64,000 nucleotides of DNA from Rebecca billardiae RCC1528 (taxonomy: Eukaryota > Protista > Haptophyta): positions 186,001-250,000 of the forward strand of contig OZ251251.1 in the NCBI GenBank assembly GCA_965240325.2, in the 5' to 3' direction. Position numbers and translations under genes: made by a program. Positions 8,666-58,937 of this stretch are shown here, piece after piece (the first letter of the stretch is position 1; every line of letters begins with the position of its first letter). A model generated the notes under the pieces. That model had not been told where the DNA came from and did no database searches. It saw only the letters and a list, made by a program, of their open reading frames with translations.

Positions 8666-10144
8666 TCACGCCGAGTCGGCCGCCCCGTGCAAACGCGGCA
8701 GCCGCTCGATGCGTGTGGGCGCCCACCAAACCCCTTTCACCTCCGCAAACGCGTAGTGTGCCTCGCTCACGCCGTGGCCAAGCGCTGCTGACCGCGTGCC
8801 GCACGAGAGCACGCTGCCGTCCGCCGTGACGTACAGCGCGTGGCGGGCATAGGCGAGCGAACAGCGCGTTACGTGCGCGTGCGCAAGCGCGTGCACACGC
8901 GTGGGCAGCTCGAAGTTGCGACCGCCCACGTGCCCCAACTGGGCACTGCTGTTGTTCCCAAACGTGTGCACGCTGCCGTCCGCGCCCAGCACCGCGCCGG
9001 TGGCATTGCCGCCACACGCACGCACAGCAGTGACGCCAGCCAGGGCCTCGATGCGCGCGGGCACCCACCGTCGAGAGGGATCGCCGTGCGCGAGCCAAAC
9101 CCCTCGTCCGAAGGAGTGCACGCCGCCCGCCGCGTCCACCACCAGGCTGTGCGCGTCGCCCGCGCTCACGTGCACGGCGCGCACGCCGGCGAGCGCCTCG
9201 ATGCGCCTCGGCGTGTGCTGATCCTGCTCGTCACCGTGGCCGAGCCGGCCTGCTGAGCCATAGCCGCACGAGTAGACAGTGCCGCCAGCAGAGACAAACA
9301 GCGAGTGCAAAGTCCCGGCGGCTATGCCACCGATGCGCACGCCGTCCAGCGCCTCGATGCGCGTCGGCTCCAGCCGGTCCTTCGCGTCGCTGTGGCCGAG
9401 CTGGCCATTGCTGTTGTAACCCCAGCTGTACGCGCACCCAGCGGCGGTGAGCGCGAGGCTGTGCTGCCCACCGGCCATGACGCCAACGACGGCTGCACCG
9501 TGCAGAGCCATGACGGGAGCGAACGAACGCCGCTCCTCCGTGTCCCCCAGCCCCAGCTGGCCACAGTGGTTGCTGCCGCAGCTGTACACGGCGCCGGCCT
9601 CGCTCAGCGCGAGCAGGTGGCCGTAGCCAGCGGCCACTGCGGCCACGCGCACCGCGCCGAGGGAGGCGACGTGTGTCGGCACGCGCACTCCGGGGCTTTC
9701 CGCGTGCCCGATGGCCACGTTCGCCCGGTACTCACCCGTCCGCCGCCTGTGCTCGTCCCGCACCTCCTCCTCGCCGCACGTGTGCAGCCCGCCATCCGCG
9801 TCCACAAACGCGCTGAAGCCGTTGCCGACCGCAGCGGGAGATGCGTGCGCACGCGCGAGCTCGAGCACGCGCTCGCGCACGAACAGCTCCTCCACCCACG
9901 TGTAGACGCCGGCGGGCAGTGACGCTGGCAGCGCGCGCTCGTGCCCGCGCGCGCGCGCGCGCTCGCGCAGCGCGCGCTCGACCGCCGAGCACCCGCCGGG
10001 CGGCGCGGCGTGGAAGAGGCGCGCTGTGGCGTTCAGGCTGACGATGTCGCGCGGCGGAAGGGGCGAGATGATGCGGCCGAGCACCTCGGGAGGCAGGTCG
10101 TCGAGCGCGAGGCGACGCGCGTGCGCCCGTGCCGTGCTGGCCAT
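8666..10144 (-). CDS. F-box-like + RCC1 repeat protein, copy 1
   Basis: ATG 10144; LDDLPPEVLGRIISPLPPRDIVSLNATARLF (F-box pattern) followed by ~7 RCC1 blades (VAAGxxHxLAL...VYSCGxNxxGQLG); intronless. Confidence 0.88.
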   Translation of the reverse strand: MASTARAHARRLALDDLPPEVLGRIISPLPPRDIVSLNATARLFHAAPPGGCSAVERALRERARARGHERALPASLPAGVYTWVEELFVRERVLELARAHASPAAVGNGFSAFVDADGGLHTCGEEEVRDEHRRRTGEYRANVAIGHAESPGVRVPTHVASLGAVRVAAVAAGYGHLLALSEAGAVYSCGSNHCGQLGLGDTEERRSFAPVMALHGAAVVGVMAGGQHSLALTAAGCAYSWGYNSNGQLGHSDAKDRLEPTRIEALDGVRIGGIAAGTLHSLFVSAGGTVYSCGYGSAGRLGHGDEQDQHTPRRIEALAGVRAVHVSAGDAHSLVVDAAGGVHSFGRGVWLAHGDPSRRWVPARIEALAGVTAVRACGGNATGAVLGADGSVHTFGNNSSAQLGHVGGRNFELPTRVHALAHAHVTRCSLAYARHALYVTADGSVLSCGTRSAALGHGVSEAHYAFAEVKGVWWAPTRIERLPRLHGAADSA

Positions 10145-10419
10145 CGCTCGCGGTTTGCGCTCAGGGTGCGCGGTGCGCCTCCGCTCCGCAAGCGCCAAAC
10201 GTCGTTCCGGAGCCGGAAAGCGGCCGGACAACGGGGAAAAGGGTCCGGAGCCAGCGCAAGCGGCGGAGGGGAGCGGCACCAGCCATCCCCTGCCCCTCGC
10301 CGTGCGGGCCTCAGCACTCAGTCACTCACTCTCAGCCTCAGGCGTCCAGCTATTGTACGGAGTTCTGTTGGTTCAAGACTACTCACACAGCGCCGCAGCA
10401 GCCGACGCACATGCCGCGC

Positions 10420-11919
10420 TCACGCCGAGCAGTCCGCCCCGTGCAAACGCCCGAAACGCGGCAGCCGCTCGATGCGCGTGGGCGCCCACCATCCCTCGTA
10501 AATCTCGTTCAACTCCGCAAACGCGTAGTCTGCATCGCTCACGCCGTGGCCGAGCGCTGCCGACCGCCGGCCACACGAGAGCACGCTGCCATCCGCTGTG
10601 ACGTACAGCGCGTGGCATTTGGTGAGCGAACAGCGCGTGACGTGCGCGTGCGCAAGCGCGTGCACACGCGTGGGCAGCTCGAAGGTGTCAGCGCCCTCGT
10701 GCCCCAGCAGGCCGTAGCTGTTGTCCCCGAACGTGTGCACGCTGCCGTCCGCGCCCAGCACCGCGCTGCCGTAATCACCAGCGCACGCACGCACAGCCGT
10801 GACGCCAACCAGGGCCTCGATGCGCGCCGGCGCGAACCATCGTGCGCAATCGCCGTGCCCACGACAGCCAAAAGACCCCTCTCCGAAGGAGTGCACGCCA
10901 CCCGCCGCGTCCACCACCAGGCTGTGGTCGTAGCCCGCGCTCACGTGCACGGCGCGCACGCCGGCGAGCGCCTCGATGCGGCTCGGCGTGTGCTGCTCCT
11001 GCTCGTCACCGTGGCCGAGCCGGCCTGTGGAGCCATCGCCGCATGAGTAGACGGTGCCATCAGCAGAGACAAACAGCGAGTGATAACCCCCGGCGGCTAC
11101 GCCACCGATGCGCACGCCGTCCAGCGCCTTGATGCGCGTCGGCTCCAGCCGGTCCTTCGTGTTGCCGTAGCGGCCCAGCTGGCCGGACCAGTTGTTGCCC
11201 CAGCTGTACGCACGGCCGTCGGCGGTGAGCGCGAGGCTGTGCTGCCCACCGGCCATGACGCCAACGACGGCTGCACCGTGCAGAGCCATGACGGGAGCGA
11301 ACGAACGCCGCTCCTCCGTGTCCCCCAGCCCCAGCTGGCCATAGTGGTTGCTGCCGCAGCTGTACACGGCGCCGGCCTCGCTCAGCGCGAGCAGGTGGCC
11401 GTAGCCAGCGGCCACCGCAGCAACGCGCAGAGCACCCAGCGAGGTGACGTGCGAGGGCACGCGCACTTCGAGGCTTTCCGCGTGCCCGACGGCCGCGTGC
11501 GTCCGATACGCACCTGTCGGCTGCCAGTCGTCCCGCACCTCCTCCTCGCCGCACGTGTGCAGCCCGCCATCCGCGTCCACAAACGCGCTTAACGCCCAAC
11601 CAGCCGCAGCGGGAGATGCGTGCGCGCGCGCGAGCTCGAGCACGCGCTCACGCACAAACAGCTCCTCCACCCACGTGCAGATTCCGGCGGGTAGTGACGC
11701 TGGCAGCGCGCGCTCGTGCCCGCGCGCGCGCGCGCGCTCGCGCAGCGCGCGCTCGACCGCCGAGCACCCGCCGGGCGGCGCGGCGCGGAAGAGGCGCGCT
11801 GTGGCGTTCAGGCTGGCGAGATCGCGCGGCGGAAGGGGCGAGATGATGCGGCCGAGTACCTCGGGAGGCAGGTCGTCGAGCGCGAGGCGACGCGCGTGCG
11901 CCTGTGCCGTGCTGGCCAT
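10420..11919 (-). CDS. F-box-like + RCC1 repeat protein, copy 2
   Basis: ATG 11919; tandem paralog of copy 1 including flanks; same domain layout. Confidence 0.88.
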   Translation of the reverse strand: MASTAQAHARRLALDDLPPEVLGRIISPLPPRDLASLNATARLFRAAPPGGCSAVERALRERARARGHERALPASLPAGICTWVEELFVRERVLELARAHASPAAAGWALSAFVDADGGLHTCGEEEVRDDWQPTGAYRTHAAVGHAESLEVRVPSHVTSLGALRVAAVAAGYGHLLALSEAGAVYSCGSNHYGQLGLGDTEERRSFAPVMALHGAAVVGVMAGGQHSLALTADGRAYSWGNNWSGQLGRYGNTKDRLEPTRIKALDGVRIGGVAAGGYHSLFVSADGTVYSCGDGSTGRLGHGDEQEQHTPSRIEALAGVRAVHVSAGYDHSLVVDAAGGVHSFGEGSFGCRGHGDCARWFAPARIEALVGVTAVRACAGDYGSAVLGADGSVHTFGDNSYGLLGHEGADTFELPTRVHALAHAHVTRCSLTKCHALYVTADGSVLSCGRRSAALGHGVSDADYAFAELNEIYEGWWAPTRIERLPRFGRLHGADCSA

Positions 11920-12203
11920 CGCCTCGCGGCTCGCGCTCGGGGTGCGCGGTGCCGGGTGCGCCTCCGCCCCGCAAGCGCCAACCGTCTTCCCCGTCCGGAG
12001 CAGTCCGGAGCCCTTGTTCCAGGTGTTGGCAGCGGCGGAGGGGAGCGGCACCGGTCGCACGCAGGACGGGCAGCTCAGGCGGGCCTCAGCACTCAGTCAC
12101 TCACTCTCAGCCTCAGGCATCTAGCTAGTCTACGGAGTTCTGTTGGTTCACAACGACACTGCTCACACAGCGCCGCAGCAGCCGACGCACATGCCGGCCG
12201 CGC

Positions 12204-13682
12204 TCACGCCAAGCCGGCCGCCCCGTGCAAACGCGGCAGCCGCTCGATGCGCGTTGGCGCCCACCGTACCTCGTCCACCTCCGCAAAATCGTCTGCCTCA
12301 CTCACGCCGTGGCCGAGCGCCGCCGACCACCGGCCGCGCGAGAGCACGCTGCCATCCGCCGTGACGTACAGCGTGTGGTCAGTGCTGAGCGAACAGCGCG
12401 TTACGTGCGCGTGCGCAAGCGCGTGCACACGCTTGGGCAGCTCAAAGGTGTCAGCGCCCTCGTGCCCCAGCTGACTGTTGCTGTTGTTCCCGAACGCGTG
12501 CAAGCTGCCGTCCGCACCCAGCACCGCGCTGCCGTCATCACCGGCACACGCACGCACAGCGGCGACACCAGCCAGGGCCTCGATGCGCGCGGGCACCAAC
12601 CGTCGAGAGCGATCGCCGTGCCCGAGCTGACCACGATTGCACTCGCCGAAGGAGTGCACGCCGCCCGCCGCGTCCACCACCAGGCTGTGCGCGTTGCCCG
12701 CGCTCACGTGCACGACGCGCACGCCCGCGAGCGCCTCGATGCGCATCGGCGTGTGCTGCCCCTGGTGGCAGCCGTGGCCGAGCCGGCCTCCGGAGCCATA
12801 GCCGCACGAGTAGACAGTGCCGCCAGCAGATACAAACAGCGAGTGCAAAGCCCCAGCGGCTACGCCACCGATGCGCACGCCGTCCAGCGCCTCGATGCGC
12901 GTCGGCTCCAGCCGGTCCTTCGCGTCGCCGTGGCCGAGCTGGCCATACCGGTTGTCTCCGCAGCTGTACGCGCACCCGGCGGCGGTGAGCGCGAGACTGT
13001 GGTACCCACCGGTCATGACGCCCACGACGGCCGCATCGTGCGGAGATATGACGGGAGCAAACGAACGCCGCTCCTCCGTGTCCCCCAGCCCCAGCTGGCC
13101 GTAGCCGTTGCCGCCGCAGCCGTACACGGCGCCAGCCTCGCTCAGCGCGAGCAGGTGGTGGTAGCCAGCGGCCACCGCAGCAACACGCAGAGCACCCAGC
13201 GAGGTGACGCGTGTGGGCACGCGCACTTCGAGGCTTTCCGCGTGCCCGATGGCCGCGTTCGCCCGGTACTCACCTGTCGGCCACCTGTGCTCGTCCAGCA
13301 CCTCCTCCTCGCCGCACGTGTGCAGCCCGCCCTGCGCGTCCGCAAACGCGCTGAAGCCGTCACCGGCCGCAGCGGAAGATGCGTGCACGCGCACTAGCTC
13401 GAGCACGCGCTCACGCACGAACAGCTCCTCCGCCCACGTGCAGACTCCGGCGGGTAGTGACGCTGGCAGCGCGCGCTCGTGCCCGCGCGCGCGCGCGCGC
13501 TCGCGCAGCGCGCGCTCGACCGCCGAGCACCCGCCGGGCGGCGCGGCGCGGAAGAGGCGCGCTGTGGCGTTCAGGCTGGCGAGGTCGCGCGGCGGAAGGG
13601 GCGAGATGATGCGGCCGAGCACCTCGGGAGGCAGGTCGTCGAGCGCGAGGCGACGCGCGTGCGCCCGTGCCGTGCTGGCCAT
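12204..13682 (-). CDS. F-box-like + RCC1 repeat protein, copy 3
   Basis: 492-aa ORF, ATG 13682; tandem paralog of copies 1-2. Confidence 0.88.
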   Translation of the reverse strand: MASTARAHARRLALDDLPPEVLGRIISPLPPRDLASLNATARLFRAAPPGGCSAVERALRERARARGHERALPASLPAGVCTWAEELFVRERVLELVRVHASSAAAGDGFSAFADAQGGLHTCGEEEVLDEHRWPTGEYRANAAIGHAESLEVRVPTRVTSLGALRVAAVAAGYHHLLALSEAGAVYGCGGNGYGQLGLGDTEERRSFAPVISPHDAAVVGVMTGGYHSLALTAAGCAYSCGDNRYGQLGHGDAKDRLEPTRIEALDGVRIGGVAAGALHSLFVSAGGTVYSCGYGSGGRLGHGCHQGQHTPMRIEALAGVRVVHVSAGNAHSLVVDAAGGVHSFGECNRGQLGHGDRSRRLVPARIEALAGVAAVRACAGDDGSAVLGADGSLHAFGNNSNSQLGHEGADTFELPKRVHALAHAHVTRCSLSTDHTLYVTADGSVLSRGRWSAALGHGVSEADDFAEVDEVRWAPTRIERLPRLHGAAGLA

Positions 13683-14377
13683 CGCTCGCGGCTCGCGCTC
13701 GGGGTGCGCGCTGGGGTCGGTGCGCCTCGCCCCACAAGCGCCAACTGTCGTTCCGCGGCCTCACCGAGTCCGATGGTGAGTTACCGGGAGCTGTGCCGAG
13801 GACCGGGAACACTCATTGGTACAGTACACACTGTACCAAGGGCCTTGACTGTACAGTATATCAGGCATAGTGTGCGTCTTAGTACATAGTAAACTGTACA
13901 TCTAGGAGCACGTGCGCAGCAACATGCGAGAATCAAGTCAGACGACGTGCGCGGACATGCGGCAATGCTGACATCAGTGCAGGAAGCCACGCGCCGAGGT
14001 GACACTCTCAGACGGGACTCGGACGACGACGAGAGCCGGCGCGATCACACCCCGCGTTTCCGCGGCGCACAGTCGCGCGCGCCACTCCCGGCGCCCGTGC
14101 CGCGCCGCATGCAACAGCGCTGACGCTGCGGCGACGGAGGCACGGAGGCGGGCGGCGTGGCGACGGTGCTGGCTGGGGCGGCGCGTCGGCGGGCGGCGTA
14201 GCGAGATCGTCGGGAGTCGGCACTCGGCGAGCTGCACGCCGGCATGCGGTCGCCGCGCCCACCGCGACACCGGGAGCTCCGCTCTCCGCCAGACCCCCCG
14301 GGCGGCAGGGCGGCAGCGCGCGCGCGCGCCGCCCGGCGGCGACGGCGCCGCGCGGGCGCCGGGCGCGTGCGCGCGGC

Positions 14378-25495: not shown

Positions 25496-26208
25496 CGCGG
25501 CCACGCCTCGCACGCCGCTCGCACGACACGCTCGCACGCCGCTGCAGCGGCCTCGACGGCGGTCGGCGGCGCGCTCGGTCTGCCCCGCGGACTGGCCGCC
25601 GCTCCCGCCCCATCGTTTCCGGTCCGTGTGCCGACGGCATCGTCTGCTCGTCCTGCTCGCGCTGACCAGCCCCGACGCCTTTGCACGTTGTTTCCGCCAC
25701 CGCGCGCCCGACTCCCTCCGCCGCCGCCTCGAAGTGTTCGACGCGGCGCCGCTGCCGGGCTCGGACTGCGCGGGCCCGCGCGCACTGCGCCCTGGCCGCC
25801 CCGGCCAGGCACAGACTGACTTTCCTGATGCCGTTCAGAGCATCTCTTGTACAGATTAAGTCGCCACGCATCATGATGAGCATCATTGCCTACTTGGAAG
25901 TTAGAAGCGGTCATGTGCAGCTCAGGCTGATGAACAGTCGGACCCGCGACGCTGCGGAGTGCAGAGTCGTAGAGTCCGTCACTCACCGAGTCACCGCAGC
26001 ACTCAGCAGTCCTGCCCACGGAAGCACTCCGGAAGATCTAAGATCTTCAGAGCTTGCCCCCGCCCGGCCGCGGCCGCCCGCCGCAAGCTTGCCCATCAAC
26101 CCCGGCCGCCCTTCCAGAGTGCCGGCGCGTGCGTGCGCGATCGGCCTTTTATTCGCGCTCGCCGTCCTCGTCCTCGCGCGCGCGTCCGCGCAGCGACCAG
26201 CCCGCGCC

Positions 26209-27499: not shown

Positions 27500-27539
<40 letters not shown>

Positions 27540-29059: not shown

Positions 29060-29092
<33 letters not shown>

Positions 29093-29441
29093 TGCTGCCG
29101 CCGCAGCTGCGCGCGGCCGCGGGCGTGTACGCGCGCGGCGCGGCGCGCGGCAGCGCATACATCCGCGGCGCGGAGGACCCCGCAAAGTTCCCCGTCTCCG
29201 CGCCGCAGCACAAGCTGGGCGCGCTCGCGCAGTGCACGGGCCGCGCCGCCTACACCGACGACCCGCCGCGCCGCGCGGGCGAATGTCACGCGGCCCTGGC
29301 GCTGGCGGCGCGTGTGGGTGTGCTGCGCGCACTCGAGGGCGCGGCGGCGGCGCGTGCTGCGCCCGGGGTCGTGGCTGTGGTGACGGCGGCGGAGCTGGCG
29401 GGCCTCGGCGTGCGCAACGCGCTGGGCGGCGACGACGACGA

Positions 29442-29473
<32 letters not shown>

Positions 29474-49236: not shown

Positions 49237-50661
49237 TCAGCGCAGCCCACATCGCAGGGGCGGCAGCTGCGCCACGCGCTGCGGCGTTGGCTGCGCTCCG
49301 CCATCGTTGCCCACGCCCAGCCCGAGCGCGCCCGAATGTCTGCCGCATGCGTGCACGCTGCCGTCAGCTGTGACGTAGAGGGCGTGCTCGAGGCCGAGTG
49401 AGCAGTCGAGCACGCGCGCATGCGCGAGGCCCTCCACCCGCTCGGGCAGCACGCGATCCATTCTGTCCCCCAGCCCCAGCTGGCCGTAGTGGTTGAACCC
49501 AAACGTGTGCACGCTGCCGTCCGCGCACACCACCGCGCTGGTGTAAAAGCCCGCGCTGGCGCGCACGGCACGAGTGCCGCCCAACGCTTCGACGAGCGTG
49601 GGCACGACGCGTTGGGCGACGCCACCGTGGCCAAGCGCGCCACGAAAACCGTCTCCGAAGGAGTGCACGCCGCCCGCTGCGTCCACCACCAGGCTGTGAG
49701 GCGCGCTCGCGCTCACGTGCACAGCGCGCATACCAGCGAGCGCCTCGATGCGCCTCGGCGTGCGCTGATCCTCCCCGTCGCCGTGGCCAAGGCGGCCAAC
49801 ATAGCCATGCCCGCACGAGTACACGGCACCACACGCCGAGAGCAGCAGCGTGTGCCAGCCGCCCGCGGCCACGCCGCCCACGCGCACGCCGTCCAGCGCC
49901 TCGATGCGTGTCGGCTGTAGCCGGTTCTCAGTGTCGCCGTGGCCGAGCTCGCCTTGGCTGTTGTAACCCCAGCTGTACGCCGCGCCACCAGCCGTCAGCG
50001 CGAGGCTGTGGTGGTAACCGGCAGCGATGCTGACGACGAGCTCCGAGCCCAGCGCCACCACCTGCACGAACGCCCGTCGCTCAGCCTTGTCGCCCACGCC
50101 CAGCTGGCCGTTGCCGTTGCTGCCGCACGCGTACACGGCGCCCGCCTCGCTCAGCGCGAGCAGGTGGTACTCGCCAGCAGCCACTGCACGCACGCGCAAC
50201 GCCGTCAGCGAGCTCACCCGCGTCGGCACGAGCACGGGCGTCTCCATGCTGAGTTTGGGATGGCCCAGCGGCGCGCCGCATGTGTGCACGCCGCCGGCAG
50301 CGTCAACAAACGCGGAGAAGCCCATACTCATGGTTGAGCTGGCGGACGCGACGTGCGCGTGCGCGTGCGCGAGCTCTAGCGTGCGCTCGCGCGCGAACAG
50401 CTCCTCCGCCCACGTGGACACGCCCGCGGGCAGGGCCGCCGGCAACGCAGCCTCGTGCCCGCGCGCGCGCGCGCGCTCGCGCAGCGCGTGCTCGAGCGGC
50501 GCGCCGCGGAAGAGGCGAGCGGCGGCGTTGACGGCGGCGAGGTCGCGCACGTCATCGAGGTGGACGAGGATGCGCGCGATCAGCTCGGGCGGCACGTCGG
50601 GCAGCCTCACGGCCGCCACTGCGGAGCGCGCCTTGGTACGCGCGCGCGTCGTCGGCGCCAT
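49237..50661 (-). CDS. F-box-like + RCC1 repeat protein, copy 4
   Basis: ATG 50661 (MAPTTRART...); LPDVPPELIARILVHLDDVRDLAAVNAAARLF then RCC1 blades. The upstream ORF extension is the duplicated 3' flank of copy 5. Confidence 0.87.
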   Translation of the reverse strand: MAPTTRARTKARSAVAAVRLPDVPPELIARILVHLDDVRDLAAVNAAARLFRGAPLEHALRERARARGHEAALPAALPAGVSTWAEELFARERTLELAHAHAHVASASSTMSMGFSAFVDAAGGVHTCGAPLGHPKLSMETPVLVPTRVSSLTALRVRAVAAGEYHLLALSEAGAVYACGSNGNGQLGVGDKAERRAFVQVVALGSELVVSIAAGYHHSLALTAGGAAYSWGYNSQGELGHGDTENRLQPTRIEALDGVRVGGVAAGGWHTLLLSACGAVYSCGHGYVGRLGHGDGEDQRTPRRIEALAGMRAVHVSASAPHSLVVDAAGGVHSFGDGFRGALGHGGVAQRVVPTLVEALGGTRAVRASAGFYTSAVVCADGSVHTFGFNHYGQLGLGDRMDRVLPERVEGLAHARVLDCSLGLEHALYVTADGSVHACGRHSGALGLGVGNDGGAQPTPQRVAQLPPLRCGLR

Positions 50662-51149: not shown

Positions 51150-52640
51150 TCAGCGCAGCCCACAGCGCAGGGGCGGCAGCTGCACCACGCGCTGCGGCGT
51201 TGGCTGCTCTCCGCCATCGTCGTCCACGCCCAGGCCGAGCGCGCCCGAATGTATGCCGCACGCGTGCACGCCGCCGTCCGCGGTGACGTAGAGGATGTGA
51301 CGACCGCCAAGTGAGCAGTCGAGCACGCGCGCATGCGCGAGGCCCTCCACCCGCTCGGGCAGCATGCGATACACTGTGTCCCCAAGCCCCAGCTGGCCAA
51401 AGCTGTTGTACCCAAACGTGTGCACACTGCCGTCCGCGCACACCACCGCGCTGGAGAGAAAGCCCGCGCTGGCGCGCACTGCACGCATGGCGCCCAGTGC
51501 CTCGATGCGCGTAGGCACCAAGCGATTGGCCATGTCACCTTGGCCGAGCGCACCAAAGTTACCGCCTCCGAAGGAGTGCACACCGCCCGCTGCGTCCACC
51601 ACCAGGCTGTGCTCACTGCCCGCGCTCAAGTGCACAATGCGCACGCCAGCAAGCGCCTCAATGCGCCTCGGTGTACGCTGCCCCTGCTCGTCACCGTGGC
51701 CAAGGCGGCCATGCAAGCCGTTGCCACACGAGTACACGGCGCTGCACGCGGAGAGCAGCAGCGTGTGCCAGCCGCCCGCGGCCACGCCACCCACGCGCAC
51801 GCCGTCCAGCGCCTCGATGCGCGTCGGCTCCAGCCGGTGCTCCGTGTCGCCGTGGCCGAGCTGGCCATCGCGGTTGAAGCCCCAGCTGTACGCCACGCCG
51901 GCAGAGGTGAGCGCAAGGCTGTGGTAAGCGCCAGCACGTATGCCGACGACGAGCTTCGCGCCCAGCGCCGCCACCTGCACGAACGCCCGTCGCTCAGCCG
52001 TGTCGCCCACGCCCAGCTGGCCGTAGCAGTTGTTGCCGCACGCGTACACGGCGCCCGTCTCGCTCAGCGCGAGCACTTGCACACCACCGGCAACCACGGC
52101 ACGCACGCGCAACGCCCCAAGCGAACCCACGCGTGTCGGCACGAGCACGGCCGTCTCCACGCTGAGCTCGGGATGGCCCAGCGGTGCGCCGCATGTGTGC
52201 ACACCGCCGGCACCATCGACAAAGGCGGAAAAATGCATCCTGGAGGATTGGCTGGCGGACGCGGCGTGCGCGTGCGCGTGCGCGAGCACGAGCGTGCGCT
52301 CGCGCGCGAACAGCTCCTCCGCCCACGTGGACACGCCCGCGGGCAGCGCCGCCGGCAACGCAGCCTCGTGCCCGCGCGCGCGCGCGCGCTCGCGCAGCGC
52401 GTGCTCGAGCGGCACGCCGCGGAAGAGGCGAGCGGCGGCGTTGGCGGCGGCGAGGTCGCGCAAGTCATCGAGGTGGACGAGGATGCGCGCGATCAGCTCG
52501 GGCGGCACGTCGGTCAGCCGCATGGCCGCCGCTGCCGAGCGCGTCTTGGCGCGCGCACGCTCGTCGAGGATGATATGGCGGACGACAAGTAGTCGTTGAC
52601 GATGATTGACGACGGTCGATCGACGGTTGCTGGACGCCAT
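51150..52640 (-). CDS. F-box-like + RCC1 repeat protein, copy 5
   Basis: Tandem paralog of copy 4 including ~290 bp 3' flank; ATG 52640 or 52523 (MRLTDVPPELIARIL). Confidence 0.87.
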   Translation of the reverse strand: MASSNRRSTVVNHRQRLLVVRHIILDERARAKTRSAAAAMRLTDVPPELIARILVHLDDLRDLAAANAAARLFRGVPLEHALRERARARGHEAALPAALPAGVSTWAEELFARERTLVLAHAHAHAASASQSSRMHFSAFVDGAGGVHTCGAPLGHPELSVETAVLVPTRVGSLGALRVRAVVAGGVQVLALSETGAVYACGNNCYGQLGVGDTAERRAFVQVAALGAKLVVGIRAGAYHSLALTSAGVAYSWGFNRDGQLGHGDTEHRLEPTRIEALDGVRVGGVAAGGWHTLLLSACSAVYSCGNGLHGRLGHGDEQGQRTPRRIEALAGVRIVHLSAGSEHSLVVDAAGGVHSFGGGNFGALGQGDMANRLVPTRIEALGAMRAVRASAGFLSSAVVCADGSVHTFGYNSFGQLGLGDTVYRMLPERVEGLAHARVLDCSLGGRHILYVTADGGVHACGIHSGALGLGVDDDGGEQPTPQRVVQLPPLRCGLR

Positions 52641-52700: not shown

Positions 52701-53624
52701 TCAACCGGCATTCGGTGGCGCCAAGGCAAGTCGCCGTCGCCGTCCGGAGGCGCGCCTCCCACTCCCCGCGCCCGCGCTGCCGCCGCCGGGCGGCCGCCTG
52801 AGCGTCGGCGGCCGCGGCGGCAGCGGCGGCTGCGCGTGCGCGCGCCACTCGGCGTCCAGGCAGGCGGGTACGTACTGCGCGCCCTGCGCGCGGTGCACAA
52901 AGAGCCCGCTGGGCGGGTCCCAGCCGTCGGTGCCGACGCACTCGGCGTAGCCGAGGCTGCGCATCAGCGTGCGCACCTTGTAGCTCTTCTCCGGCGCGAA
53001 CGCCTCCAGCTCGATCAGGAAGACCGTTACGGCCGTTACGCTCAGGTCGAGCGTGAGTAGCGCCTCGAGCTCGGCGCCCTCGACGTCGAGCGAGAAGAAG
53101 TCGATCGTCCGGTAGCGCGAGACGTAGGCCTGCATCGGGCGGCACGGCACGTCGAACACGTTCCCCGTCCACGAGCGGTTCTCCGCGTGGTACCGCGGCT
53201 TCTTGCTCGCCGGCTCGGCGCCGCCGTCGCCGGTGTGCCACTTGCGCGCGAACGAATCCGCCATGTGCTCAATGTCGCCGCCGACGGTGAACTTCTGCAC
53301 GAAGCGGACGGTGGTGCGCGGCGGCGCGCAGACGGCGCCGAAGATTGCCTCCGCGCCCGTGCGCATCCGCGCCACGTTCCGCTCCAGCTGCTGCGCGTTG
53401 AAGCGGGACCCTTCGATCAGCGTGCCGCGCCAGCCCGCGCACGTCGCCAGGAAGAGCGTGTTGGAGGCGGTGACGCCGTCGAACGCGCCGATCTCGACGT
53501 AGGTGCCGTTGAAGACGTTCCGGAAGAACCGCTCGTGCACGTGCATCTCCTCGCCCGACTGCGACTTTGAGCGCCGGCACTTGCCCAGCGCGAGCAGCGC
53601 GGCGAGCGCGAGCACTGCCGCCAT
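52701..53624 (-). CDS. FkbM (Methyltransf_21) family SAM-dependent methyltransferase with signal peptide/anchor
   Basis: SQSGEE...NGTYVEIGAFDGVTASNT...GWRGTLIE and IDFFSLDVEGAE motifs; ATG 53624. Confidence 0.88.
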   Translation of the reverse strand: MAAVLALAALLALGKCRRSKSQSGEEMHVHERFFRNVFNGTYVEIGAFDGVTASNTLFLATCAGWRGTLIEGSRFNAQQLERNVARMRTGAEAIFGAVCAPPRTTVRFVQKFTVGGDIEHMADSFARKWHTGDGGAEPASKKPRYHAENRSWTGNVFDVPCRPMQAYVSRYRTIDFFSLDVEGAELEALLTLDLSVTAVTVFLIELEAFAPEKSYKVRTLMRSLGYAECVGTDGWDPPSGLFVHRAQGAQYVPACLDAEWRAHAQPPLPPRPPTLRRPPGGGSAGAGSGRRASGRRRRLALAPPNAG

Positions 53625-53715
53625 CGTCGTCCGTCCCCGATTCTTTTTTACCGGACTGTCTTCCTCGCAAACAGTCCGGAAAGCCGCCGGCCGAGCCGAC
53701 CGAGCACGCGTAATC

Positions 53716-55007
53716 ATGTCGCTCTGCGCGCTGCCTGCCGCCCTCGCCGTGCTCATGGGCGTGCACACGCGGCCGCGCGCGCGGTTGGTACAGCCCGAGC
53801 TCGCGTCGCGCTCCGCCGTGCTCCACGCCGCCGCCGGACTCGCGCTCGGCGCCATCGTGCGCCCGGACTCCGCCATCGCCAAGGTGGAGCCGCTGCCAGG
53901 CTTTGTCCAGGACTCTCTCGGCGCGAGCGCGGAGCGGCCGTTCGACGTGGGCGGCGGCGGCCGGCGGAACGGGCGGAGCGGGTACCTGAACCAGTGCCCC
54001 TCCAAGCGCACCCGCCGCACCTGCGTCTCCTCCTTCGACGACCCGTACGACTCCTCGTACGTGCCGCCGCTCACCTACGCGCTCGCCGAGGACTCGCCGG
54101 CCATGATCAAGGCGTCTCGGCAGGGGCTGCCGGCGCCGGCGCCGAAGCCGTTCGACGAGGCGCTGGAGGAGCTCGCCGCGGCGGTGCGCACGCTCAAGGG
54201 CGCGGTGGTCGTCGAGGTGCGCGCGCGCGCGCAGCCGCCGGCCGCCGCCGCCGCCGCGCGCGCGTGAGCGCTCGCTCACCCGTCGCCGCCACACCCGCCT
54301 CCGTGCGTGTGCGGGCGCGCACGCGCGCTTGCAGGCGAAGGACCGCTACCTGCTCGCGGAGGTGAAGGACCCGATCACCGGCACCACCGACGACGTCGAG
54401 TTCCTGCTCAGCCTCGACACACCAGGTGCGCTGGGCCCTTGTTTTTATTTTGCCGGGTTTTCCGAATGTCGGCACCGCACTGAATATATTTTCTGCTCGG
54501 GCGCGCGGCGCTGCGCGCGCGGCACGGTGCACACTGCTGGGCCTGGGGGCGGGGCGCGCATGCCGAAGCGTGGGGGCACGGCCGCCGAATTATGTGGTGA
54601 CACGGGGCTGCCTTACGCGTCTTGATCTGCGAGATTGCATCTCGAGTCCTCGAGATTGCATCTCGCCGACTGCTGGGGCGGCAGGCCTGGCTGGAGGCCT
54701 GGACTGCCAGGCGGAGCGTTGAGTGCTGAGTGCTGCGCTGGTCAGCTGGGCGCGGGCTGCTGGGCGAGGGCCCTGCCGAGCGCACGCCACTCGCGCCCAG
54801 CGCAGCGCGCCCCCTCAGCCAACCCGCGGCCCCGCCCCCACGCCCCGCCCCGCCACAGGCGTGGTCAACTACCGCTCGGCCGCGCGCACGGCCGCGCCCA
54901 ACCTGCCGGGCAGCGCGGACGACAAGCGGCACCGGACTCGGCTCAAGGAGGTCCGGGTGGCGCTGCAGTCGAAGGGCTGGCGCTCGGTCGGGCGGATTCA
55001 GCAATGA
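53716..55007 (+). CDS. DUF1499-like protein, probably plastid/thylakoid-lumen targeted, 3 exons
   Basis: Exons 53716-54216, 54335-54425, 54859-55007; L..CP......CVSS, YL.AE....TG..DDVEFL, V.YRSAAR, D...R.R...VR.AL; N-terminal signal plus hydrophobic stretch ending AIA. Confidence 0.78.
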
Positions 55008-55598: not shown

Positions 55599-57062
55599 TC
55601 AGCCGGCAGCAGCGTGAATACGATCCACGCGCGCGGCGGGCTGCTCGATGCGCCGGGGCGGCTCGATGTCACCGCTCCCCTCGTGGTCGTCGTCGGCGAG
55701 GCTGCGGCCGTAGCCGAGCGAGCCCGAGGGGACGCCGCACGAGTGCACGCCGCCGTCCGCCGTCACAAACAGCGCGTGGTGACAGCCGATCGCGCAGCTT
55801 GCCACCGGCGCCAGCGCGAGGGTGGTCGCGGGCACGAGCTTGTAGAGCCGGGTGCTGTACACTGGGTGCCCGTCGCCGAGCATGCGCACGGTGCCGTCCG
55901 CGCCGAGCACCGCGCTGCCCTCCGCGCCGGCAAAGGCGCGCACGGCGCGCACGCCGGCCAAGGCGCGGATGCGCTTGGGAACTGGCTGGACCATGCCAGG
56001 GATCTCGGCGCCATGGCCGAGGCAGCGGCTCCTGTTGAGCCCGAACGAGTGCACGCCGCCCGCTGCGTCCACCACCAGGCTGTGCAACGCGCCCGCGCTC
56101 ACGTGCGCGGCGCGCACGGCCGCGAGCGCCTCGACGCGCTTGGGCGTGTCTTGGTCATCCGCTGTGCCGTGGCCGAGCCGGCCGTAGCGGCTCATGCCGC
56201 ACGTGTACACGGCGCCGGCGGTGGCGAGCAGCACTGTGTGCGCCTCGCCTGCGCTCGCGCCGCCGACGCGCACGCCCTCCAGCGCGCCGATGCGCGCCGG
56301 CTCCAGCCGGCTCGTCGTGTCGCCGTGGCCGAGCTGGCCTCTGCCGTTGTCGCCCCAGCTGTACGCGCACCCAGCGGCGGCGAGCGCGACGCCGTGCCAG
56401 GCGCCGGCGGCGATGCAGACGACCACCTCGTCCCGGAGCGAGTCAAGCGCGGTGAATGCACGGCGCCGGCGCGTGTCCCCGAGCCCCAGCTGCCCGCGCC
56501 CGTTCTCGCCGCAGCCGTACACGGCGCCGGCCTCGCTCAGCGCGAGCAGGTGCTCCGGGCCAGCGGAGACGGCGCAGATGCGCACGGCCGCGAGCGAGGC
56601 GACGCGCGTGGGCACGAGCACGGGCGCGTCGCCCGCGTGCTTCGAATGCCCGAGTGCGGCGGGCTGGCCGTACCCGTGCCGCGTCTCCTCCTCGCCGCAC
56701 GTGTACAGCCCGCCGTCCGCGCCGACGATTGCGCTGCCGCTCTCGGCGCATGCGACGGCGCCCGCGTGCGCGCGCGCGAGGCTGAGCACGCACTCGCGCG
56801 CGAGCAGCTCTTCGATCCACGTGCGTGTGGGCAGGAGTGCGGTCGTCGTCTGCAGCGCGCGCTCGTGCCCACGGTCTCGCGCGCGAGCGCGCAGCGCGTG
56901 CTCGACGGCCGAGCGGCCGCCCGGCGCGCCGCGGAAGAGGCGCGAGGTGGCATTGGCAGCCACGAGGTCGCGCAGCGGCAAGAGCGCGACGATGCGCTCG
57001 AGCACCTCGGCGGGGATGGTGTCGAGGGGGGCGAGCGGCGCGCGAGACGTTGTATTCGTCAT
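55599..57062 (-). CDS. F-box-like + RCC1 repeat protein, copy 6 (more diverged)
   Basis: ATG 57062; LDTIPAEVLERIVALLPLRDLVAANATSRLF, shared linker VEHALRARARDRGHERAL...TWIEELLARE, RCC1 blades. Confidence 0.86.
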   Translation of the reverse strand: MTNTTSRAPLAPLDTIPAEVLERIVALLPLRDLVAANATSRLFRGAPGGRSAVEHALRARARDRGHERALQTTTALLPTRTWIEELLARECVLSLARAHAGAVACAESGSAIVGADGGLYTCGEEETRHGYGQPAALGHSKHAGDAPVLVPTRVASLAAVRICAVSAGPEHLLALSEAGAVYGCGENGRGQLGLGDTRRRRAFTALDSLRDEVVVCIAAGAWHGVALAAAGCAYSWGDNGRGQLGHGDTTSRLEPARIGALEGVRVGGASAGEAHTVLLATAGAVYTCGMSRYGRLGHGTADDQDTPKRVEALAAVRAAHVSAGALHSLVVDAAGGVHSFGLNRSRCLGHGAEIPGMVQPVPKRIRALAGVRAVRAFAGAEGSAVLGADGTVRMLGDGHPVYSTRLYKLVPATTLALAPVASCAIGCHHALFVTADGGVHSCGVPSGSLGYGRSLADDDHEGSGDIEPPRRIEQPAARVDRIHAAAG

Positions 57063-57348: not shown

Positions 57349-57454
57349 GTTCGTGTACTGTCGAGTAACTACTTGTCAGTCCAGATAGTAGTTGATGAAG
57401 GGTACATCATAATTACGTGGTGCGGTGCTGCGAAGTTCCGTCAAGTGCCCGAGT

Positions 57455-58937
57455 TCAATGGGCCTCTCGCACGCGCGCTGCGAGCTGCGCGATGCGCGTG
57501 GGCGCATCGAGGTGCTTGACCGTTGGCAACACTCCTTGCGCCGGCGGGCTCCCTGCAGTTGCGCTGTGCCCGAGCGCGGCCGAGTTCCTGCCGCACGAGT
57601 GCACGGCGCCGTCCGCCGTCACGAAAAGCGAATGGTGGCCGCTGAGCGCACAGTCGACGACCTGCTCGTGCGCGAGCGCGCGCACCCGCTCCGGCGGCCA
57701 CACGAAGAAGACGTTGTACGCGTGCACACGCGCGTGCCCCAGCTGGAACTCCATGGTTTCGCCGAACGTGTGCACGCTGCCGTCCGCGCCCCGCACGGCG
57801 ACAGCGCTCTGGCTTGCGCGTGCGCGCACTGCACGCCCGCCCGCAACGGCCTGCTGGATGCGCGTCGGTGTGTGCACTGGCCGTGACTCGAAAGACGCGA
57901 AGTCCTCACAGAGCTCGTGCACGCCGCCCCCCGCGTCTACCACCAGGCCGTGCCCTCCGCCCGCGGCCACGTGCACAGCGCGCACGCCCGCGCGCCCGAA
58001 CACGTGCACTCGCAACGGCGCGAGCTACGCGGTGTCGAGCATGGGCAGCGTCTCCTGCCATGAGCATATCCGCTCCCGAACAGGAGGACGGCGCCATCGA
58101 TCGAGAGCAGCATCGTGCGCTCCGCGCTAGCAGCCACTCCGCCCAGGCGCACGCCGTCCAGCGCCTCGATGCGCGTCGGCTCCAGCCGGTCCTTCGTGTC
58201 GCCGTGGCCGAGCTGGCCGTAGTTGTTGCGGCCCCAGCTGTACGCACGGCCATCGGCGGCGAGCGCGAAGCTGTGCGATCTCACGGCCGCGAGCTGCACG
58301 ATGGCTTCCTCCTCGAGCGCGCCCACAACGCAGAACGCGTGGCGCCTCTCCGTGTCGCCCAGCCCCAGCTGGCCTCAAGCGTTGCCCCCGCAGCTGTACA
58401 CGCCGCCGGCCTCGCTGAGCGCGAGCAGGTGGAATTGACCAGCGGCCACTGCGGCCACTCGCACCGCGGAGAGGGACGGCACGCGCGTCGGAACGGGCAC
58501 AAGCCGCTCGGCCGGGTGGCCCATGACAGCTCTGTCCAACTCGCCCGGGCACTCACCGCATGTGCGCAGGGCGCCCTCCGCGTCCACGAACGCGCTTTCG
58601 CGTTGCACGCACGCGACGACGGCCGCGTGCGCGCGCGCGAGCTCGAGCACGCGCTCGCGCGCAAGGAGCTCCGCTGTCCACGTGCACGCGCGCGCGCGCG
58701 GCGCGGCGTCACGCAGCGTGCGCGCGTGCCCGCGGCGGCTCGCACCGCATGCGCAGCGCGTGCTCGACCGCCGAGCGGCCGCCCGGCGCGCCGCGGAAGA
58801 GCCGCGAGACCGCGTTGGCAGCGACGAGGGCACGGTGGTAGGTAGGCGACGACTCGCTCGAGCACCTCGGCCGGCAGGTCGCCGAACGCTGGGCGACGCG
58901 TATGGAAATGGCGACTGCCAGCTGTGTCGTTCGCCAT
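57455..58937 (-). pseudogene. F-box-like + RCC1 pseudogene, copy 7
   Basis: Family motifs split across four ORFs (DLPAEVLERVVAYLP; TWTAELLARERVLELARAH...GGNA*; GQLGLG...; VRAVHVAAGGGHGLVVD) with an in-frame TGA at 58375-58377 and frame changes near 58830 and 58030. Confidence 0.82.

What the first reader, a model, noticed from the sequence alone, without database searches (positions are those of the whole stretch)
8666..58937. Expanding F-box + RCC1 propeller family with hypervariable loops: candidate diversifying SCF receptor repertoire
Seen: seven intronless copies in three groups (3+2+2), all on the minus strand, while most neighbours have introns. Within clusters the F-box, linker and blade frameworks are almost identical, but the residues in AG-xx-H and G-x-N-xx-GQ differ in nearly every copy (one blade reads YNSN, NNWS, DNRY, YNSQ, FNRD, DNGR, RNNY; another AG-TL/GY/AL/GW/GW/EA-H). 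Several variable codons are A/T-ending (AAT, TAT, CAA, AGA) against the local codon bias. Known: such loops form the ligand-binding face of RCC1/BLIP-II propellers, and F-box proteins recruit substrates to SCF ligases. Inference: birth-and-death evolution with diversifying selection on the binding face, e.g. intracellular recognition of viral or other non-self proteins in an alga.
Basis: partly seen in the sequence, partly recalled or inferred. Interest (0 to 1): 0.8.

Follow-up and report, generated by a model that had tools for sequence, protein, structure and literature searches.

The report
Hypervariable F-box/RCC1 receptor gene family
A haptophyte alga carries about 390 intronless genes that join an F-box (the handle of SCF ubiquitin ligases) to a seven-bladed RCC1 propeller whose scaffold is conserved while about 30 loop residues on one face change faster than silent DNA, as expected of a diversifying set of target-recognition receptors with unknown targets.

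Summary
The window has six intact intronless minus-strand genes and one frameshifted pseudogene, in groups of 3+2+2. Each encodes an N-terminal F-box, a helical linker and a seven-bladed RCC1-like propeller.

A family-specific 24-mer occurs 392 times in the 72-Mb genome, against 3 for the control. HSP90 places the organism among haptophytes.

Across 79 non-redundant copies, 29 positions are hypervariable: the xx of AG-xx-H and the x, xx of G-x-N-xx-G. Their mean entropy is 3.3 bits, against 0.9 elsewhere. They align with the UVR8 residues that contact its dimer partner and COP1.

My codon models give 2dlnL of about 1716 for a class with omega above 1. All 29 sites have P(omega>1) above 0.95. 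Their nonsynonymous rate is about 6 times the framework synonymous rate. The F-box and linker segment shows no such signal, and neighbouring codons are strongly conserved. A/T-ending codons are enriched at these sites (odds ratio 2.1).

Twenty-five metagenomic homologues vary at the same positions. Skp1 binding, expression and targets are untested.

This scan reached the same reading on other contigs of this genome (s1-352978, s1-336747). I class it as a new variant of a known kind.

The parts
8666..10144 (-). Copy 1: intact intronless F-box/RCC1 gene (492 aa plus stop)
   Evidence: ORF and translation. Pfam WD40_RLD E 5.8e-64. F-box-like 26.9 bits, over the cut-off, in the genome scan.
10420..11919 (-). 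Copy 2: intact gene (499 aa)
   Evidence: WD40_RLD E 3.8e-70 and F-box-like 24.7 bits. F-box-like 28.6 bits.
12204..13682 (-). Copy 3: intact gene (492 aa), used as the reference for numbering, the structure model and the searches
   Evidence: WD40_RLD E 6.2e-81. AF2 model pLDDT 91, pTM 0.91. Best solved match is UVR8, TM 0.93 normalised to the target.
13545..13643 (-). F-box of copy 3 (residues 14-46, with the L-P motif)
   Evidence: Pfam F-box-like 28.1 bits against a cut-off of 24.3 when the N-terminus is scanned alone. All 48 N-termini tested hit PF12937. Coordinates checked by translation.
13374..13544 (-). Helical linker of copy 3 (residues 47-103) between the F-box and the propeller
   Evidence: AF2 helices 54-65 and 83-100. 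With the F-box it best matches the F-box plus linker modules of Cdc4 (Z 5.9), beta-TrCP1 (Z 5.4) and Fbw7.
12318..13373 (-). Seven-bladed RCC1-like propeller of copy 3 (residues 104-455, blade period 52 aa)
12945..12956 (-). Example of a hypervariable G-x-N-xx-G loop (copy 3 residues 243-246, DNRY). It aligns with UVR8 W250, S251, K252 and Y253.
12846..12851 (-). Example of a hypervariable AG-xx-H loop (copy 3 residues 278-279, AL). It aligns with UVR8 W285 and R286.
   Evidence: In one search, site 278 has beta 12 against alpha 0.35, LRT 90.9.
49237..50661 (-). Copy 4: intact gene (474 aa from the aligned Met)
51150..52523 (-). Copy 5: intact gene (457 aa from the aligned Met; an upstream ATG at 52640 is also open)
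55599..57062 (-). Copy 6: intact, more divergent gene (487 aa)
57458..58904 (-). Copy 7: pseudogene with at least three frameshifts (near 58835, 58744 and 58020-58050) and a degraded C-terminal half

Best explanation
These genes belong to a family of about 390 substrate receptors for SCF (Skp1-Cullin-F-box) ubiquitin ligases in a haptophyte alga.

How the protein is likely built and used. The N-terminal F-box would dock on the genome's single Skp1. A rigid helical linker positions a seven-bladed RCC1-like propeller, as in Cdc4, Fbw7 and beta-TrCP. One face of the propeller would bind the protein to be ubiquitinated. That face is formed by the strand1-to-strand2 loops (AG-xx-H) and the strand3-to-strand4 loops (G-x-N-xx-G and their tails).

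How the family evolves. It grows by tandem and segmental duplication and loses copies to frameshifts and stop codons. The F-box, linker and blade scaffold are kept by purifying selection, with some exchange between copies. About 30 to 40 residues of the binding face are driven apart by diversifying selection, so every copy has a different surface.

Shown here: the architecture, the copy number, where the variation lies and the omega>1 signal. Inferred: Skp1 binding, ligase function, expression, and that the targets are fast-evolving or non-self proteins such as viral proteins or mobile-element products.
For: Architecture.
- RCC1-like domain E 1e-64 to 1e-81 in all six intact copies.
- AF2 model pLDDT 91. 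Best solved folds are UVR8 (TM 0.93 to target), HERC2 and RCC1.
- F-box-like reaches 28.1 bits against a 24.3 cut-off on the N-terminus alone. All 48 N-termini hit PF12937 and 28 hit PF00646. Window copies 1-3 are over the cut-off in the genome scan.
- An N-terminal profile against the PDB returns only F-box proteins: cyclin F, FBXW7, FBXO31, an F-box protein and AnkB, at E 0.1-0.65.
- Fold searches of the N-terminal model rank Fbw7-Skp1 first with Foldseek. With VIA-align over 48,161 chains, Cdc4-Skp1 ranks first and beta-TrCP1 third.
- Skp1 is present as one gene, and cullins are present.

Family size.
- All 87 loci scored had E below 1e-166 and 80 were open full-length.
- The family 24-mer hits 392 times, against 3 for the control.

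Variation.
- The 29 motif positions have 3.34 bits of entropy against 0.93 elsewhere.
- All 79 non-redundant copies have a unique 29-residue signature.

Selection.
- Discrete-omega mixture lnL is -53301.8, against -54159.6 for omega<=1. All 29 sites have P(omega>1) above 0.95.
- FEL-type tests with a site-specific synonymous rate give 13 sites at p<0.001, 9 of them in the motif set.
- Topology-free pair likelihood puts the variable-site nonsynonymous rate at 6 times the framework synonymous rate (LRT 392-852). It is still 2-3 times the synonymous rate of those same codons (LRT 14-18). Adjacent codons have omega 0.13-0.20.
- Segment-specific trees give 2dlnL of 136-560 for the propeller segments and 1.9 for the F-box and linker.
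- When the 72 flanking bases differ at only 1-2 positions, 45-51% of variable codons have already changed amino acid.

One face.
- 38 of 91 residues in face-X loops are selected, against 4 of 64 in opposite-face loops and 5 of 134 in strands (odds ratio 15, p 2e-14).
- The variable positions align with UVR8 W198, R200, Y201, W233, R234, W250, K252, Y253, W285, R286, W302, K304, W337 and R338. These are dimer-interface and COP1-contact residues (PMC7455749, PMC9020657).

Independent set. Twenty-five metagenomic homologues vary at the same 29 positions: 3.19 against 1.06 bits, and 23 of the top 29 columns.
Against: - No RNA data were available, so expression is unproven.
- Skp1 binding is not tested.
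- The F-box match covers only profile positions 1-33 of 47. It is weak or absent when whole proteins are scanned: none for copies 4 and 5, and 18.8 bits for copy 6. The structural Z-scores are middling, at 5.9 or below.
- The comparison is among paralogues that exchange segments, which violates the single-tree assumption.
- The codon models are my own implementation with fixed branch lengths, not PAML or HyPhy.
- The synonymous rate within the variable codons is itself 2-3 times higher than elsewhere. With that rate freed, the G-x-N-xx-G class alone is not significantly above omega 1 on the tree.
- Only 79 of about 390 copies were analysed.
- Assigning loops to a face rests on strand topology and on alignment to UVR8, not on model coordinates.
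Confidence: 0.66

Rival explanations
1. The loops are simply unconstrained. They drift neutrally while the scaffold is conserved, and there is no selection for diversity.
For: Loops tolerate substitutions in many propellers. With a free within-codon synonymous rate, the G-x-N-xx-G class has omega about 0.7 on the tree.
Against: The nonsynonymous rate at the 29 sites is about 6 times the synonymous rate of the surrounding framework, and neutral drift cannot exceed 1. It holds with segment trees and in window pairs. Pooled omega against the same codons' synonymous rate is 2-3. Amino-acid use is biased towards Asp, Tyr, Gly and Ser rather than following mutation.
Confidence: 0.05
2. The pattern is mainly mutational. 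A local process changes whole loops at once: short-tract templated conversion between paralogues, multi-nucleotide mutation or targeted hypermutation. Gene conversion homogenises the scaffold. Selection only filters the outcome.
For: - Changes cluster by loop: 36 loops unchanged and 53 fully changed, against 19.5 and 36.9 expected.
- 59% of differing variable codons differ at two or more bases in close pairs.
- The synonymous rate inside the variable codons is 2-3 times higher.
- A/T-ending codons are enriched there.
- Copies 1-3 are mosaics (earlier notes s1-338981 and s1-341266).
Against: - Codons 1-3 positions away have normal synonymous rates (alpha 0.7-1.5) and very low nonsynonymous rates. 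Any such process would have to hit 2-3 codons precisely at about 12 places per gene.
- Most loop variants are singletons among 79 copies, so they are not drawn from a small cassette pool.
- The nonsynonymous rate still exceeds the raised synonymous rate.
- Loop clustering is largely explained by mosaic local history, since change tracks flank divergence.
- Raised synonymous flux and A/T-ending codons are also expected when codons turn over quickly in a GC-driven genome.
Confidence: 0.14
3. The proteins are not SCF receptors. The N-terminal motif is a degenerate F-box relic, and the propellers act in some other way, for example as stoichiometric binders, inhibitors or scaffolds, or with another ligase.
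For: The F-box match is partial (profile positions 1-33 of 47) and near threshold. Helix 3 is family-specific. No binding data exist.
Against: The N-terminal segment is under purifying selection (omega 0.21-0.30) with near-invariant L17 and P18. Every significant or top-ranked sequence and fold match is to F-box modules bound to Skp1. Some distant relatives hit both PF00646 and PF12937.
Confidence: 0.1
4. The family does make SCF receptors under diversifying selection, but it serves internal conflicts or self-recognition rather than defence. Examples are mating or allorecognition incompatibility, toxin-antidote-like drive, or control of mobile elements.
For: In nematodes, young F-box genes cause hybrid incompatibility and mark genomic divergence (PMC11573670, PMC12951971). 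The arrays sit on small, repeat-rich contigs.
Against: Nothing here separates this from anti-viral recognition. No targets are known.
Confidence: 0.2
5. The genes are of viral or mobile-element origin, for example an integrated giant-virus paralogue family, rather than host genes.
For: They are intronless and multicopy in an intron-containing genome. Giant viruses carry large repeat-protein families.
Against: The best matches in 2.9 million viral contigs are 25-35% identical, cover the propeller only and have no F-box. The copies have host-like GC and sit among ordinary host genes: xanthine-dehydrogenase-like, FkbM methyltransferase, bestrophin and nitroreductase. They are spread over at least 20 contigs.
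Confidence: 0.03

Closest known systems
Expanded F-box adaptor families of Caenorhabditis (FTH/FBA2 type) and of plants
   Same: [quoted passage not shown] They have been proposed to track fast-evolving targets (PMC8120010, citing Thomas 2006).
   Different: The recognition domain here is an RCC1-like propeller, not FTH, FBA, Kelch or LRR. The variation is confined to about 30 geometrically periodic loop residues on one face. The host is a unicellular haptophyte.
FBXO24 (mammalian F-box protein with RCC1 repeats)
   Same: The same domain pair, an F-box followed by an RCC1-like domain (PMC10932545).
   Different: FBXO24 is a single-copy conserved gene with specific roles in sperm formation. It is not an expanded or hypervariable family. 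Orthology was not tested and is unlikely, since no FBXO24 appeared among the listed hits.
Cdc4 / Fbw7 / beta-TrCP (F-box, helical linker, WD40 propeller)
   Same: The same overall plan. These are the best fold matches of the N-terminal 105 residues, and all were solved bound to Skp1. The substrate binds on one propeller face.
   Different: Their propeller is WD40, not RCC1-like. They are conserved single genes that recognise phosphodegrons.
UVR8 (plant UV-B photoreceptor, RCC1-like propeller)
   Same: It is the closest solved structure by sequence (E 9e-69) and by fold (TM 0.93). The variable residues here occupy the positions of UVR8's dimer-interface and COP1-contact residues (PMC7455749, PMC9020657).
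   Different: The Trp triad and its partner Arg residues are not conserved; these are the hypervariable positions. There is no C-terminal VP tail, and an F-box is present. The family is therefore not a UV-B receptor.

Membership tests
F-box proteins (SCF substrate receptors) | F-box domain recognised by the Pfam models at or above the curated threshold | tested here: met
   PF12937 scores 28.1 bits against a 24.3 cut-off on the N-terminus of copy 3. All 48 N-termini hit PF12937 and 28 hit PF00646. Copies 1-3 are over the cut-off in the genome scan. The match is weaker on whole proteins: none for copies 4 and 5, and 18.8 bits for copy 6. It covers profile positions 1-33 of 47 only.
F-box proteins (SCF substrate receptors) | Three-helix F-box fold with the conserved Leu-Pro motif | tested here: inconclusive
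   L17 and P18 are near-invariant. AF2 predicts helices 19-26, 31-44 and 54-65. The top fold matches are Fbw7 (E 0.3), Cdc4 (Z 5.9) and beta-TrCP1 (Z 5.4), but their scores fall in the range where helical matches can be fortuitous.
F-box proteins (SCF substrate receptors) | Binds Skp1 and assembles with Cul1 and Rbx1 | not testable with these tools
   The partner genes exist: one Skp1 and several cullins. No multimer prediction or binding assay was available.
RCC1-like domain (RLD) propellers | Seven RCC1 repeats forming a closed beta-propeller | tested here: met
   PF25390 E 1e-64 to 1e-81. Seven AG-xx-H motifs recur at a 52-residue period. AF2 pLDDT is 91, with 27 strands in seven blades. 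Foldseek TM is 0.93 to UVR8 and 0.84 to the HERC2 RLDs.
UVR8-type UV-B photoreceptors | Conserved GWRHT Trp triad (W233, W285, W337) with adjoining Arg residues | tested here: not met
   These positions are the hypervariable ones. Trp makes up only 3.5% of residues there, and dipeptides such as GY, AL and NA replace WR.
RCC1 guanine-nucleotide exchange factors for Ran | Conserved Ran-binding face with a beta-wedge, single-copy and essential | not tested
   RCC1 is only a distant match (E 1e-28). A hypervariable face and about 390 copies argue against a conserved exchange-factor role. The catalytic residues were not examined.
Adaptively evolving ubiquitin-ligase adaptor superfamilies (Thomas 2006 type) | Large lineage-specific expansion, purifying selection on the ligase-docking domain, and omega>1 sites in the recognition domain | tested here: met
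   About 390 copies. F-box and linker omega is 0.2-0.3 with no omega>1 class (2dlnL 1.9). Propeller segments give 2dlnL 136-560. All 29 motif sites have P(omega>1) above 0.95.

The most novel reading that the evidence does not exclude
Haptophytes carry a germline-encoded intracellular recognition repertoire. It consists of hundreds of SCF receptors whose RCC1-propeller face is diversified like an antigen-binding site, with loops rich in Tyr, Asp, Gly and Ser. The receptors would mark viral or mobile-element proteins for degradation. This would be a protist counterpart of NLR, TRIM or variable-lymphocyte-receptor-type immune repertoires, built on a scaffold not known for this role. A dedicated short-patch diversification process at the loop codons may assist it.
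Probability: 0.3. Interest if true: 0.9.

Novelty: new variant of a known kind. Interest (0 to 1): 0.72.

Why it matters
Haptophytes are major ocean primary producers, and viruses end their blooms. Almost nothing is known about how such protists recognise intracellular invaders.

A family of about 390 genes, with one conserved ligase-docking module and one hypervariable binding face, is a concrete and testable candidate for such a recognition system. If not that, it is a candidate for an internal-conflict system.

The family also offers a natural library on a rigid seven-bladed scaffold. It has about 30 defined variable positions, and every sampled copy is different. That is of interest for protein-binder engineering and for studying how selection, duplication and exchange between paralogues shape receptor repertoires. 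The same variable positions recur in an independent environmental family, so the design is not peculiar to one strain.

Tried and rejected
- RNA evidence. The run index found one non-RNA run holding 8% of the sampled words. Its contigs give only short pieces, a few identical and most 85-95% alike, so nothing can be said on expression or strain variation.
- NG86 counting. It gave whole-gene dN/dS of 0.6-1.3, which I rejected as inflated by the extreme GC3 bias. The F3x4 likelihood model gives a global omega of 0.36.
- Taxonomy from the neighbouring xanthine-dehydrogenase-like exon. This failed because of the search's length window. HSP90 worked instead.
- Genomic context of the closest outside homologue (P0003).
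- Viral origin. Rejected, because viral contigs hold only generic 25-35% identical RCC1 propellers.
- Near-identical duplicates. They carry too few differences (5 nonsynonymous, 1 of them in a variable codon) to test where the first changes fall.
- Upstream spacers. They are conserved only within cluster 1, and no family-wide promoter element was seen.
- Literature. I found no paper on a haptophyte or algal F-box-RCC1 expansion.
- Failed calls. Searches failed because back-end machines did not answer. One search was my own coordinate error.
Full report
WHAT IS IN THE WINDOW

The window is G000:C35:186001-250000 of a 72-Mb assembly in 41 contigs, with about 72% G+C.

Six intact ORFs lie on the minus strand: 8666-10144, 10420-11919, 12204-13682, 49237-50661, 51150-52523 and 55599-57062. 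They encode proteins of 457-499 residues. A seventh homologous stretch lies at 57458-58904. Its homology passes through frames -2, -3, -1 and -3 with abutting junctions near 58835, 58744 and 58020-58050. It is therefore a frameshifted pseudogene, not an intron-containing gene.

Cluster 1 is a tandem array with a unit of about 1.77 kb and spacers of about 280 bp.

Ordinary genes lie between and around the clusters:
- a xanthine-dehydrogenase-like gene (25681-31296)
- an FkbM-type methyltransferase (52701-54074)
- a bestrophin (59428-60327)
- a nitroreductase-domain gene (6350-8206)

I did not test rigorously whether those neighbours have introns.

THE ORGANISM

The cytosolic HSP90 exon of this genome is 96% identical to that of Chrysoculter rhomboideus (MMETSP1335). 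It is 91% identical to Diacronema lutheri and 88-90% to Emiliania, Calcidiscus, Tisochrysis, Isochrysis and Phaeocystis. The alga is a haptophyte.

ARCHITECTURE

All six intact copies carry an RCC1-like domain (PF25390, E 1e-64 to 1e-81).

An AlphaFold2 model of copy 3, built with 62 aligned sequences, has mean pLDDT 91 and pTM 0.91. It shows four N-terminal helices followed by seven four-stranded blades. Its best solved matches are UVR8 (TM 0.93 normalised to the target), then the HERC2, HERC1, RPGR and RCC1 propellers.

The F-box claim needed more care. On whole proteins the Pfam F-box-like hit is marginal or absent. The other evidence is more favourable:
- On the N-terminus alone the hit reaches 28.1 bits against a 24.3 cut-off.
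- All 48 N-termini tested, paralogues and distant homologues, hit PF12937, and 28 hit PF00646.
- Copies 1-3 are over the cut-off in a six-frame genome scan.
- A profile of the N-termini finds only F-box proteins in the PDB: cyclin F, FBXW7, FBXO31, an F-box protein and Legionella AnkB, at E 0.1-0.65.
- A separate model of residues 1-105 ranks Fbw7-Skp1 complexes first with Foldseek.
- Among 48,161 representative chains, the same model ranks Cdc4-Skp1 first (Z 5.9), beta-TrCP1-Skp1 third (Z 5.4), and Fbs2, FBXO31 and Fbw7 further down.

No single score is strong, but the matches consistently point to the F-box plus helical-linker module of propeller-type F-box proteins. L17 and P18 are near-invariant, and this segment evolves under purifying selection with omega 0.2-0.3. 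The genome has one Skp1 gene and several cullins.

THE FAMILY IS VERY LARGE

A search of the genome with copy 3 gave 730 first-look candidates. All 87 that were scored had E below 1e-166 and 62-84% identity. Eighty were open over the full length and seven had a single in-frame TGA.

A 24-base stretch from blade 1 is 98% conserved among copies. It occurs 392 times at up to 3 mismatches, against 3 for the reversed control, and more than 100 of those hits are perfect. The family therefore has about 390 members, roughly 0.8% of the genome.

The copies form dense head-to-tail arrays on the roughly 1-Mb contigs C31, C34 and C35, with scattered copies on at least 20 contigs. The family makes up most of the genome's F-box complement (457 first-look F-box candidates).

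Near-identical copies with dS below 0.01 and dead copies fit birth-and-death evolution. Copies 1-3 are mosaics of each other. That agrees with earlier first-reader notes on segment exchange.

WHERE THE VARIATION LIES

I collected 86 full-length coding sequences, aligned them and reduced them to 79 non-redundant ones.

Column entropy is very uneven. The two x of AG-xx-H in all seven blades, and the x, xx of G-x-N-xx-G in blades 2-6, make 29 positions recurring with an exact 52-residue period. They average 3.34 bits against 0.93 for the rest, and include 28 of the 50 most variable columns. All 79 copies have a different 29-residue signature, and most loop variants are singletons.

Within the window, cluster mates are 86-87% identical in the framework but 10-32% identical at these positions.

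The residues used there are rich in Asp, Tyr, Gly and Ser. Tyr makes up about 12%, against about 1% in the framework.

IS IT SELECTION?

Simple Nei-Gojobori counting overstates omega in this genome, where GC3 is 87%. I therefore wrote a GY94-F3x4 likelihood model with pruning on IQ-TREE topologies and scaled branch lengths. The global omega is 0.36.

Site-class test. A free discrete omega mixture fits far better than one limited to omega<=1: lnL -53301.8 against -54159.6, each at its best scale, giving 2dlnL of about 1716. About 16% of sites fall in classes above 1. Sixty-five sites have P(omega>1) above 0.95, including all 29 motif positions.

Site-specific synonymous rate. With this allowed, in a FEL-type test, 25 sites are positive at p<0.05 and 13 at p<0.001, nine of them motif positions. 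257 sites are under purifying selection.

Pooled classes on the tree:
- All 29 sites: alpha 2, beta 4 (LRT 48.9).
- The AG-xx-H class: omega 2 (LRT 61.7).
- The G-x-N-xx-G class: alpha 4, beta 2.8 (not significant).
- Codons 1-3 positions away: alpha 0.7-1.4 and beta 0.12-0.2.

Controls for exchange between paralogues. Paralogues exchange segments, so I repeated the test without any tree, on 10 and 24 independent close pairs. The nonsynonymous rate at the 29 sites is 6 times the framework synonymous rate (LRT 392 and 852). It is 2-3 times the synonymous rate of the same codons (LRT 14-18). Adjacent codons have omega 0.13-0.20.

With separate trees for five gene segments, the four propeller segments give 2dlnL of 423, 560, 516 and 136, and all 29 sites have P above 0.95. 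The F-box and linker segment gives 1.9 and no such site, which serves as an internal negative control.

Loop change also tracks local history. With no difference in the 72 flanking bases, 12% of variable codons differ in amino acid. With 1-2 differences, 45-51% differ. The window's own pairs show the same excess (LRT 23-92 against beta = 1).

A/T-ending codons are twice as frequent there after stratifying by amino acid (odds ratio 2.08, above 1 for all 18 amino acids). I read both as by-products of rapid codon turnover in a genome that otherwise drives third positions to G or C.

They also leave room for a mutational contribution. Changes are clustered by loop, and 59% of differing codons differ at two or more bases. 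I keep that as the main rival, at about 0.14.

ONE FACE

In an antiparallel four-stranded blade, the strand1-to-strand2 and strand3-to-strand4 loops lie on one face, and the other two loops lie on the opposite face.

Using the model's strand boundaries for blades 2-7, sites with P(omega>1) above 0.95 are distributed as follows:
- 38 of 91 residues in the first set of loops
- 4 of 64 in the opposite loops
- 5 of 134 in strands

The odds ratio is 15 (p 2e-14). Against the opposite loops alone it is 10.8 (p 4e-7).

The HMMER alignment to UVR8 pairs the variable positions with UVR8 residues as follows:

| Family positions | UVR8 residues |
|---|---|
| 191, 193, 194 | W198, R200, Y201 |
| 226, 227 | W233, R234 |
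| 243, 245, 246 | W250, K252, Y253 |
| 278, 279 | W285, R286 |
| 295, 297, 298 | W302, K304, F305 |
| 330, 331 | W337, R338 |

The six tryptophans lie at the UVR8 dimer interface (PMC7455749). R200, R234, R286, K304 and R338 contact COP1, and W250, K252, Y253 and W302 matter for the dimer or the COP1 complex (PMC9020657). The hypervariable residues therefore occupy proven protein-contact positions of the closest solved relative. The same comparison shows the family is not a UV-B receptor, because the Trp triad is not conserved.

RELATIVES ELSEWHERE

The best outside matches are unnamed metagenomic or Logan proteins of 470-520 residues. They are 38-53% identical over about 95% of the length, and some have precomputed F-box domains. 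Named hits such as plant UVR8 and an Emiliania 'E3 ubiquitin ligase' match the propeller only.

Twenty-five of these outside proteins are about 70% identical to each other, so they form a second multicopy family. They vary at the same 29 positions: 3.19 against 1.06 bits, 23 of the 29 most variable propeller columns, Mann-Whitney p 1.5e-18. This check is independent of how the positions were chosen.

Viral contigs hold only generic RCC1 propellers.

COMPARISON WITH WHAT IS KNOWN

The domain pair exists in mammalian FBXO24 (PMC10932545). Large F-box families with purifying selection on the F-box and positive selection in the recognition domain are known in nematodes and plants (PMC8120010, citing Thomas 2006). 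The plan of F-box, linker and propeller is that of Cdc4, Fbw7 and beta-TrCP.

Three features appear to be new. The recognition module of such an expansion is an RCC1-like propeller. The variation is strictly periodic and confined to one face. The host is a haptophyte. I found no paper describing this. Two follow-up reports of this scan reached the same reading on other contigs of the same genome. My tests were run independently of them.

LIMITS

- No expression data.
- No Skp1-binding test.
- No model coordinates, so face assignment rests on topology and the UVR8 alignment.
- The codon models are my own code with fixed branch lengths.
- The comparison is among paralogues, and only 79 of about 390 copies were analysed.
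- The proposed role in recognising viral or other non-self proteins is untested.

VERDICT

I class the finding as a new variant of a known kind, with interest 0.72.

Noticed in passing
Blade 1 of every copy, e.g. the 24-base family motif encoding GGLHTCGE (residues 117-124) within window 13311-13334 (minus) in copy 3; genome-wide: A 24-base stretch is 98% conserved at the nucleotide level, silent positions included. It is perfectly identical in more than 100 copies, although the family's median dS is 0.41. Local synonymous rates vary from 0.35 to 2 along the gene. This could reflect a conversion hotspot or a nucleotide-level constraint.
   Followed up: partly
G000 copies listed (e.g. L008, L014, L042, L050, L059, L074): Seven of 87 scored copies have exactly one in-frame stop, and it is always TGA. 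Two are mid-gene (alignment columns 258 and 402, not at variable codons). Three lie near the C-terminus and may simply be earlier true stops.
   Followed up: partly
G000:C31, about 2-41 kb against about 126-168 kb (and 684-686 kb): Whole blocks of the array recur nearly identically. For example L036 and L037, and L065 and L066, have identical coding sequences, and L027, L028 and L035 differ at 1-3 codons. This indicates very recent segmental duplications tens of kilobases long.
   Followed up: partly
window 8400-14000: Copies 1-3 are mosaics. Copy 1 is 70% identical to copy 2 over 8759-9058, where copy 3 is 90% identical to copy 2. At the 3' end, copy 3 is 89% and copy 2 is 64% identical to copy 1. 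This is the signature of exchange between paralogues.
   Followed up: partly
L043 against L047 (G000:C31:6900-9300 and 148400-150900), codons 173-174: In an otherwise almost identical pair, a silent change in the Gly codon before a variable position sits next to an Ile-to-Leu change in the variable codon. This may be a single dinucleotide event at the loop.
   Followed up: no
window 25681-31296 (+): One 1871-codon open frame carries the xanthine-dehydrogenase/aldehyde-oxidase domains in order (Fer2, Fer2_2, FAD_binding_5, MoCoBD_1, MoCoBD_2), with long gaps between them. Introns probably stay open in frame in this very GC-rich DNA, so long ORFs here are not gene models.
   Followed up: no
window 52701-54074 (-): An FkbM-type methyltransferase gene (PF05050, E 1e-11) sits between copies 5 and 6 on the same strand.
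   Followed up: no
Run X1 laid on window 8400-14000: The only public run holding part of the stretch has a few contigs identical to the window (e.g. 10948-11209) and many that are 85-95% alike, joined differently. This looks like low-coverage data of the same or a related alga, with the paralogues collapsed.
   Followed up: no
Proteins P0002-P0047; loci L089 and L090: A second multicopy F-box/RCC1 family, about 70% identical within itself and 38-40% to this one, exists in marine and environmental metagenomes. It has the same variable positions and a clearer F-box. Its organism is unknown.
   Followed up: partly
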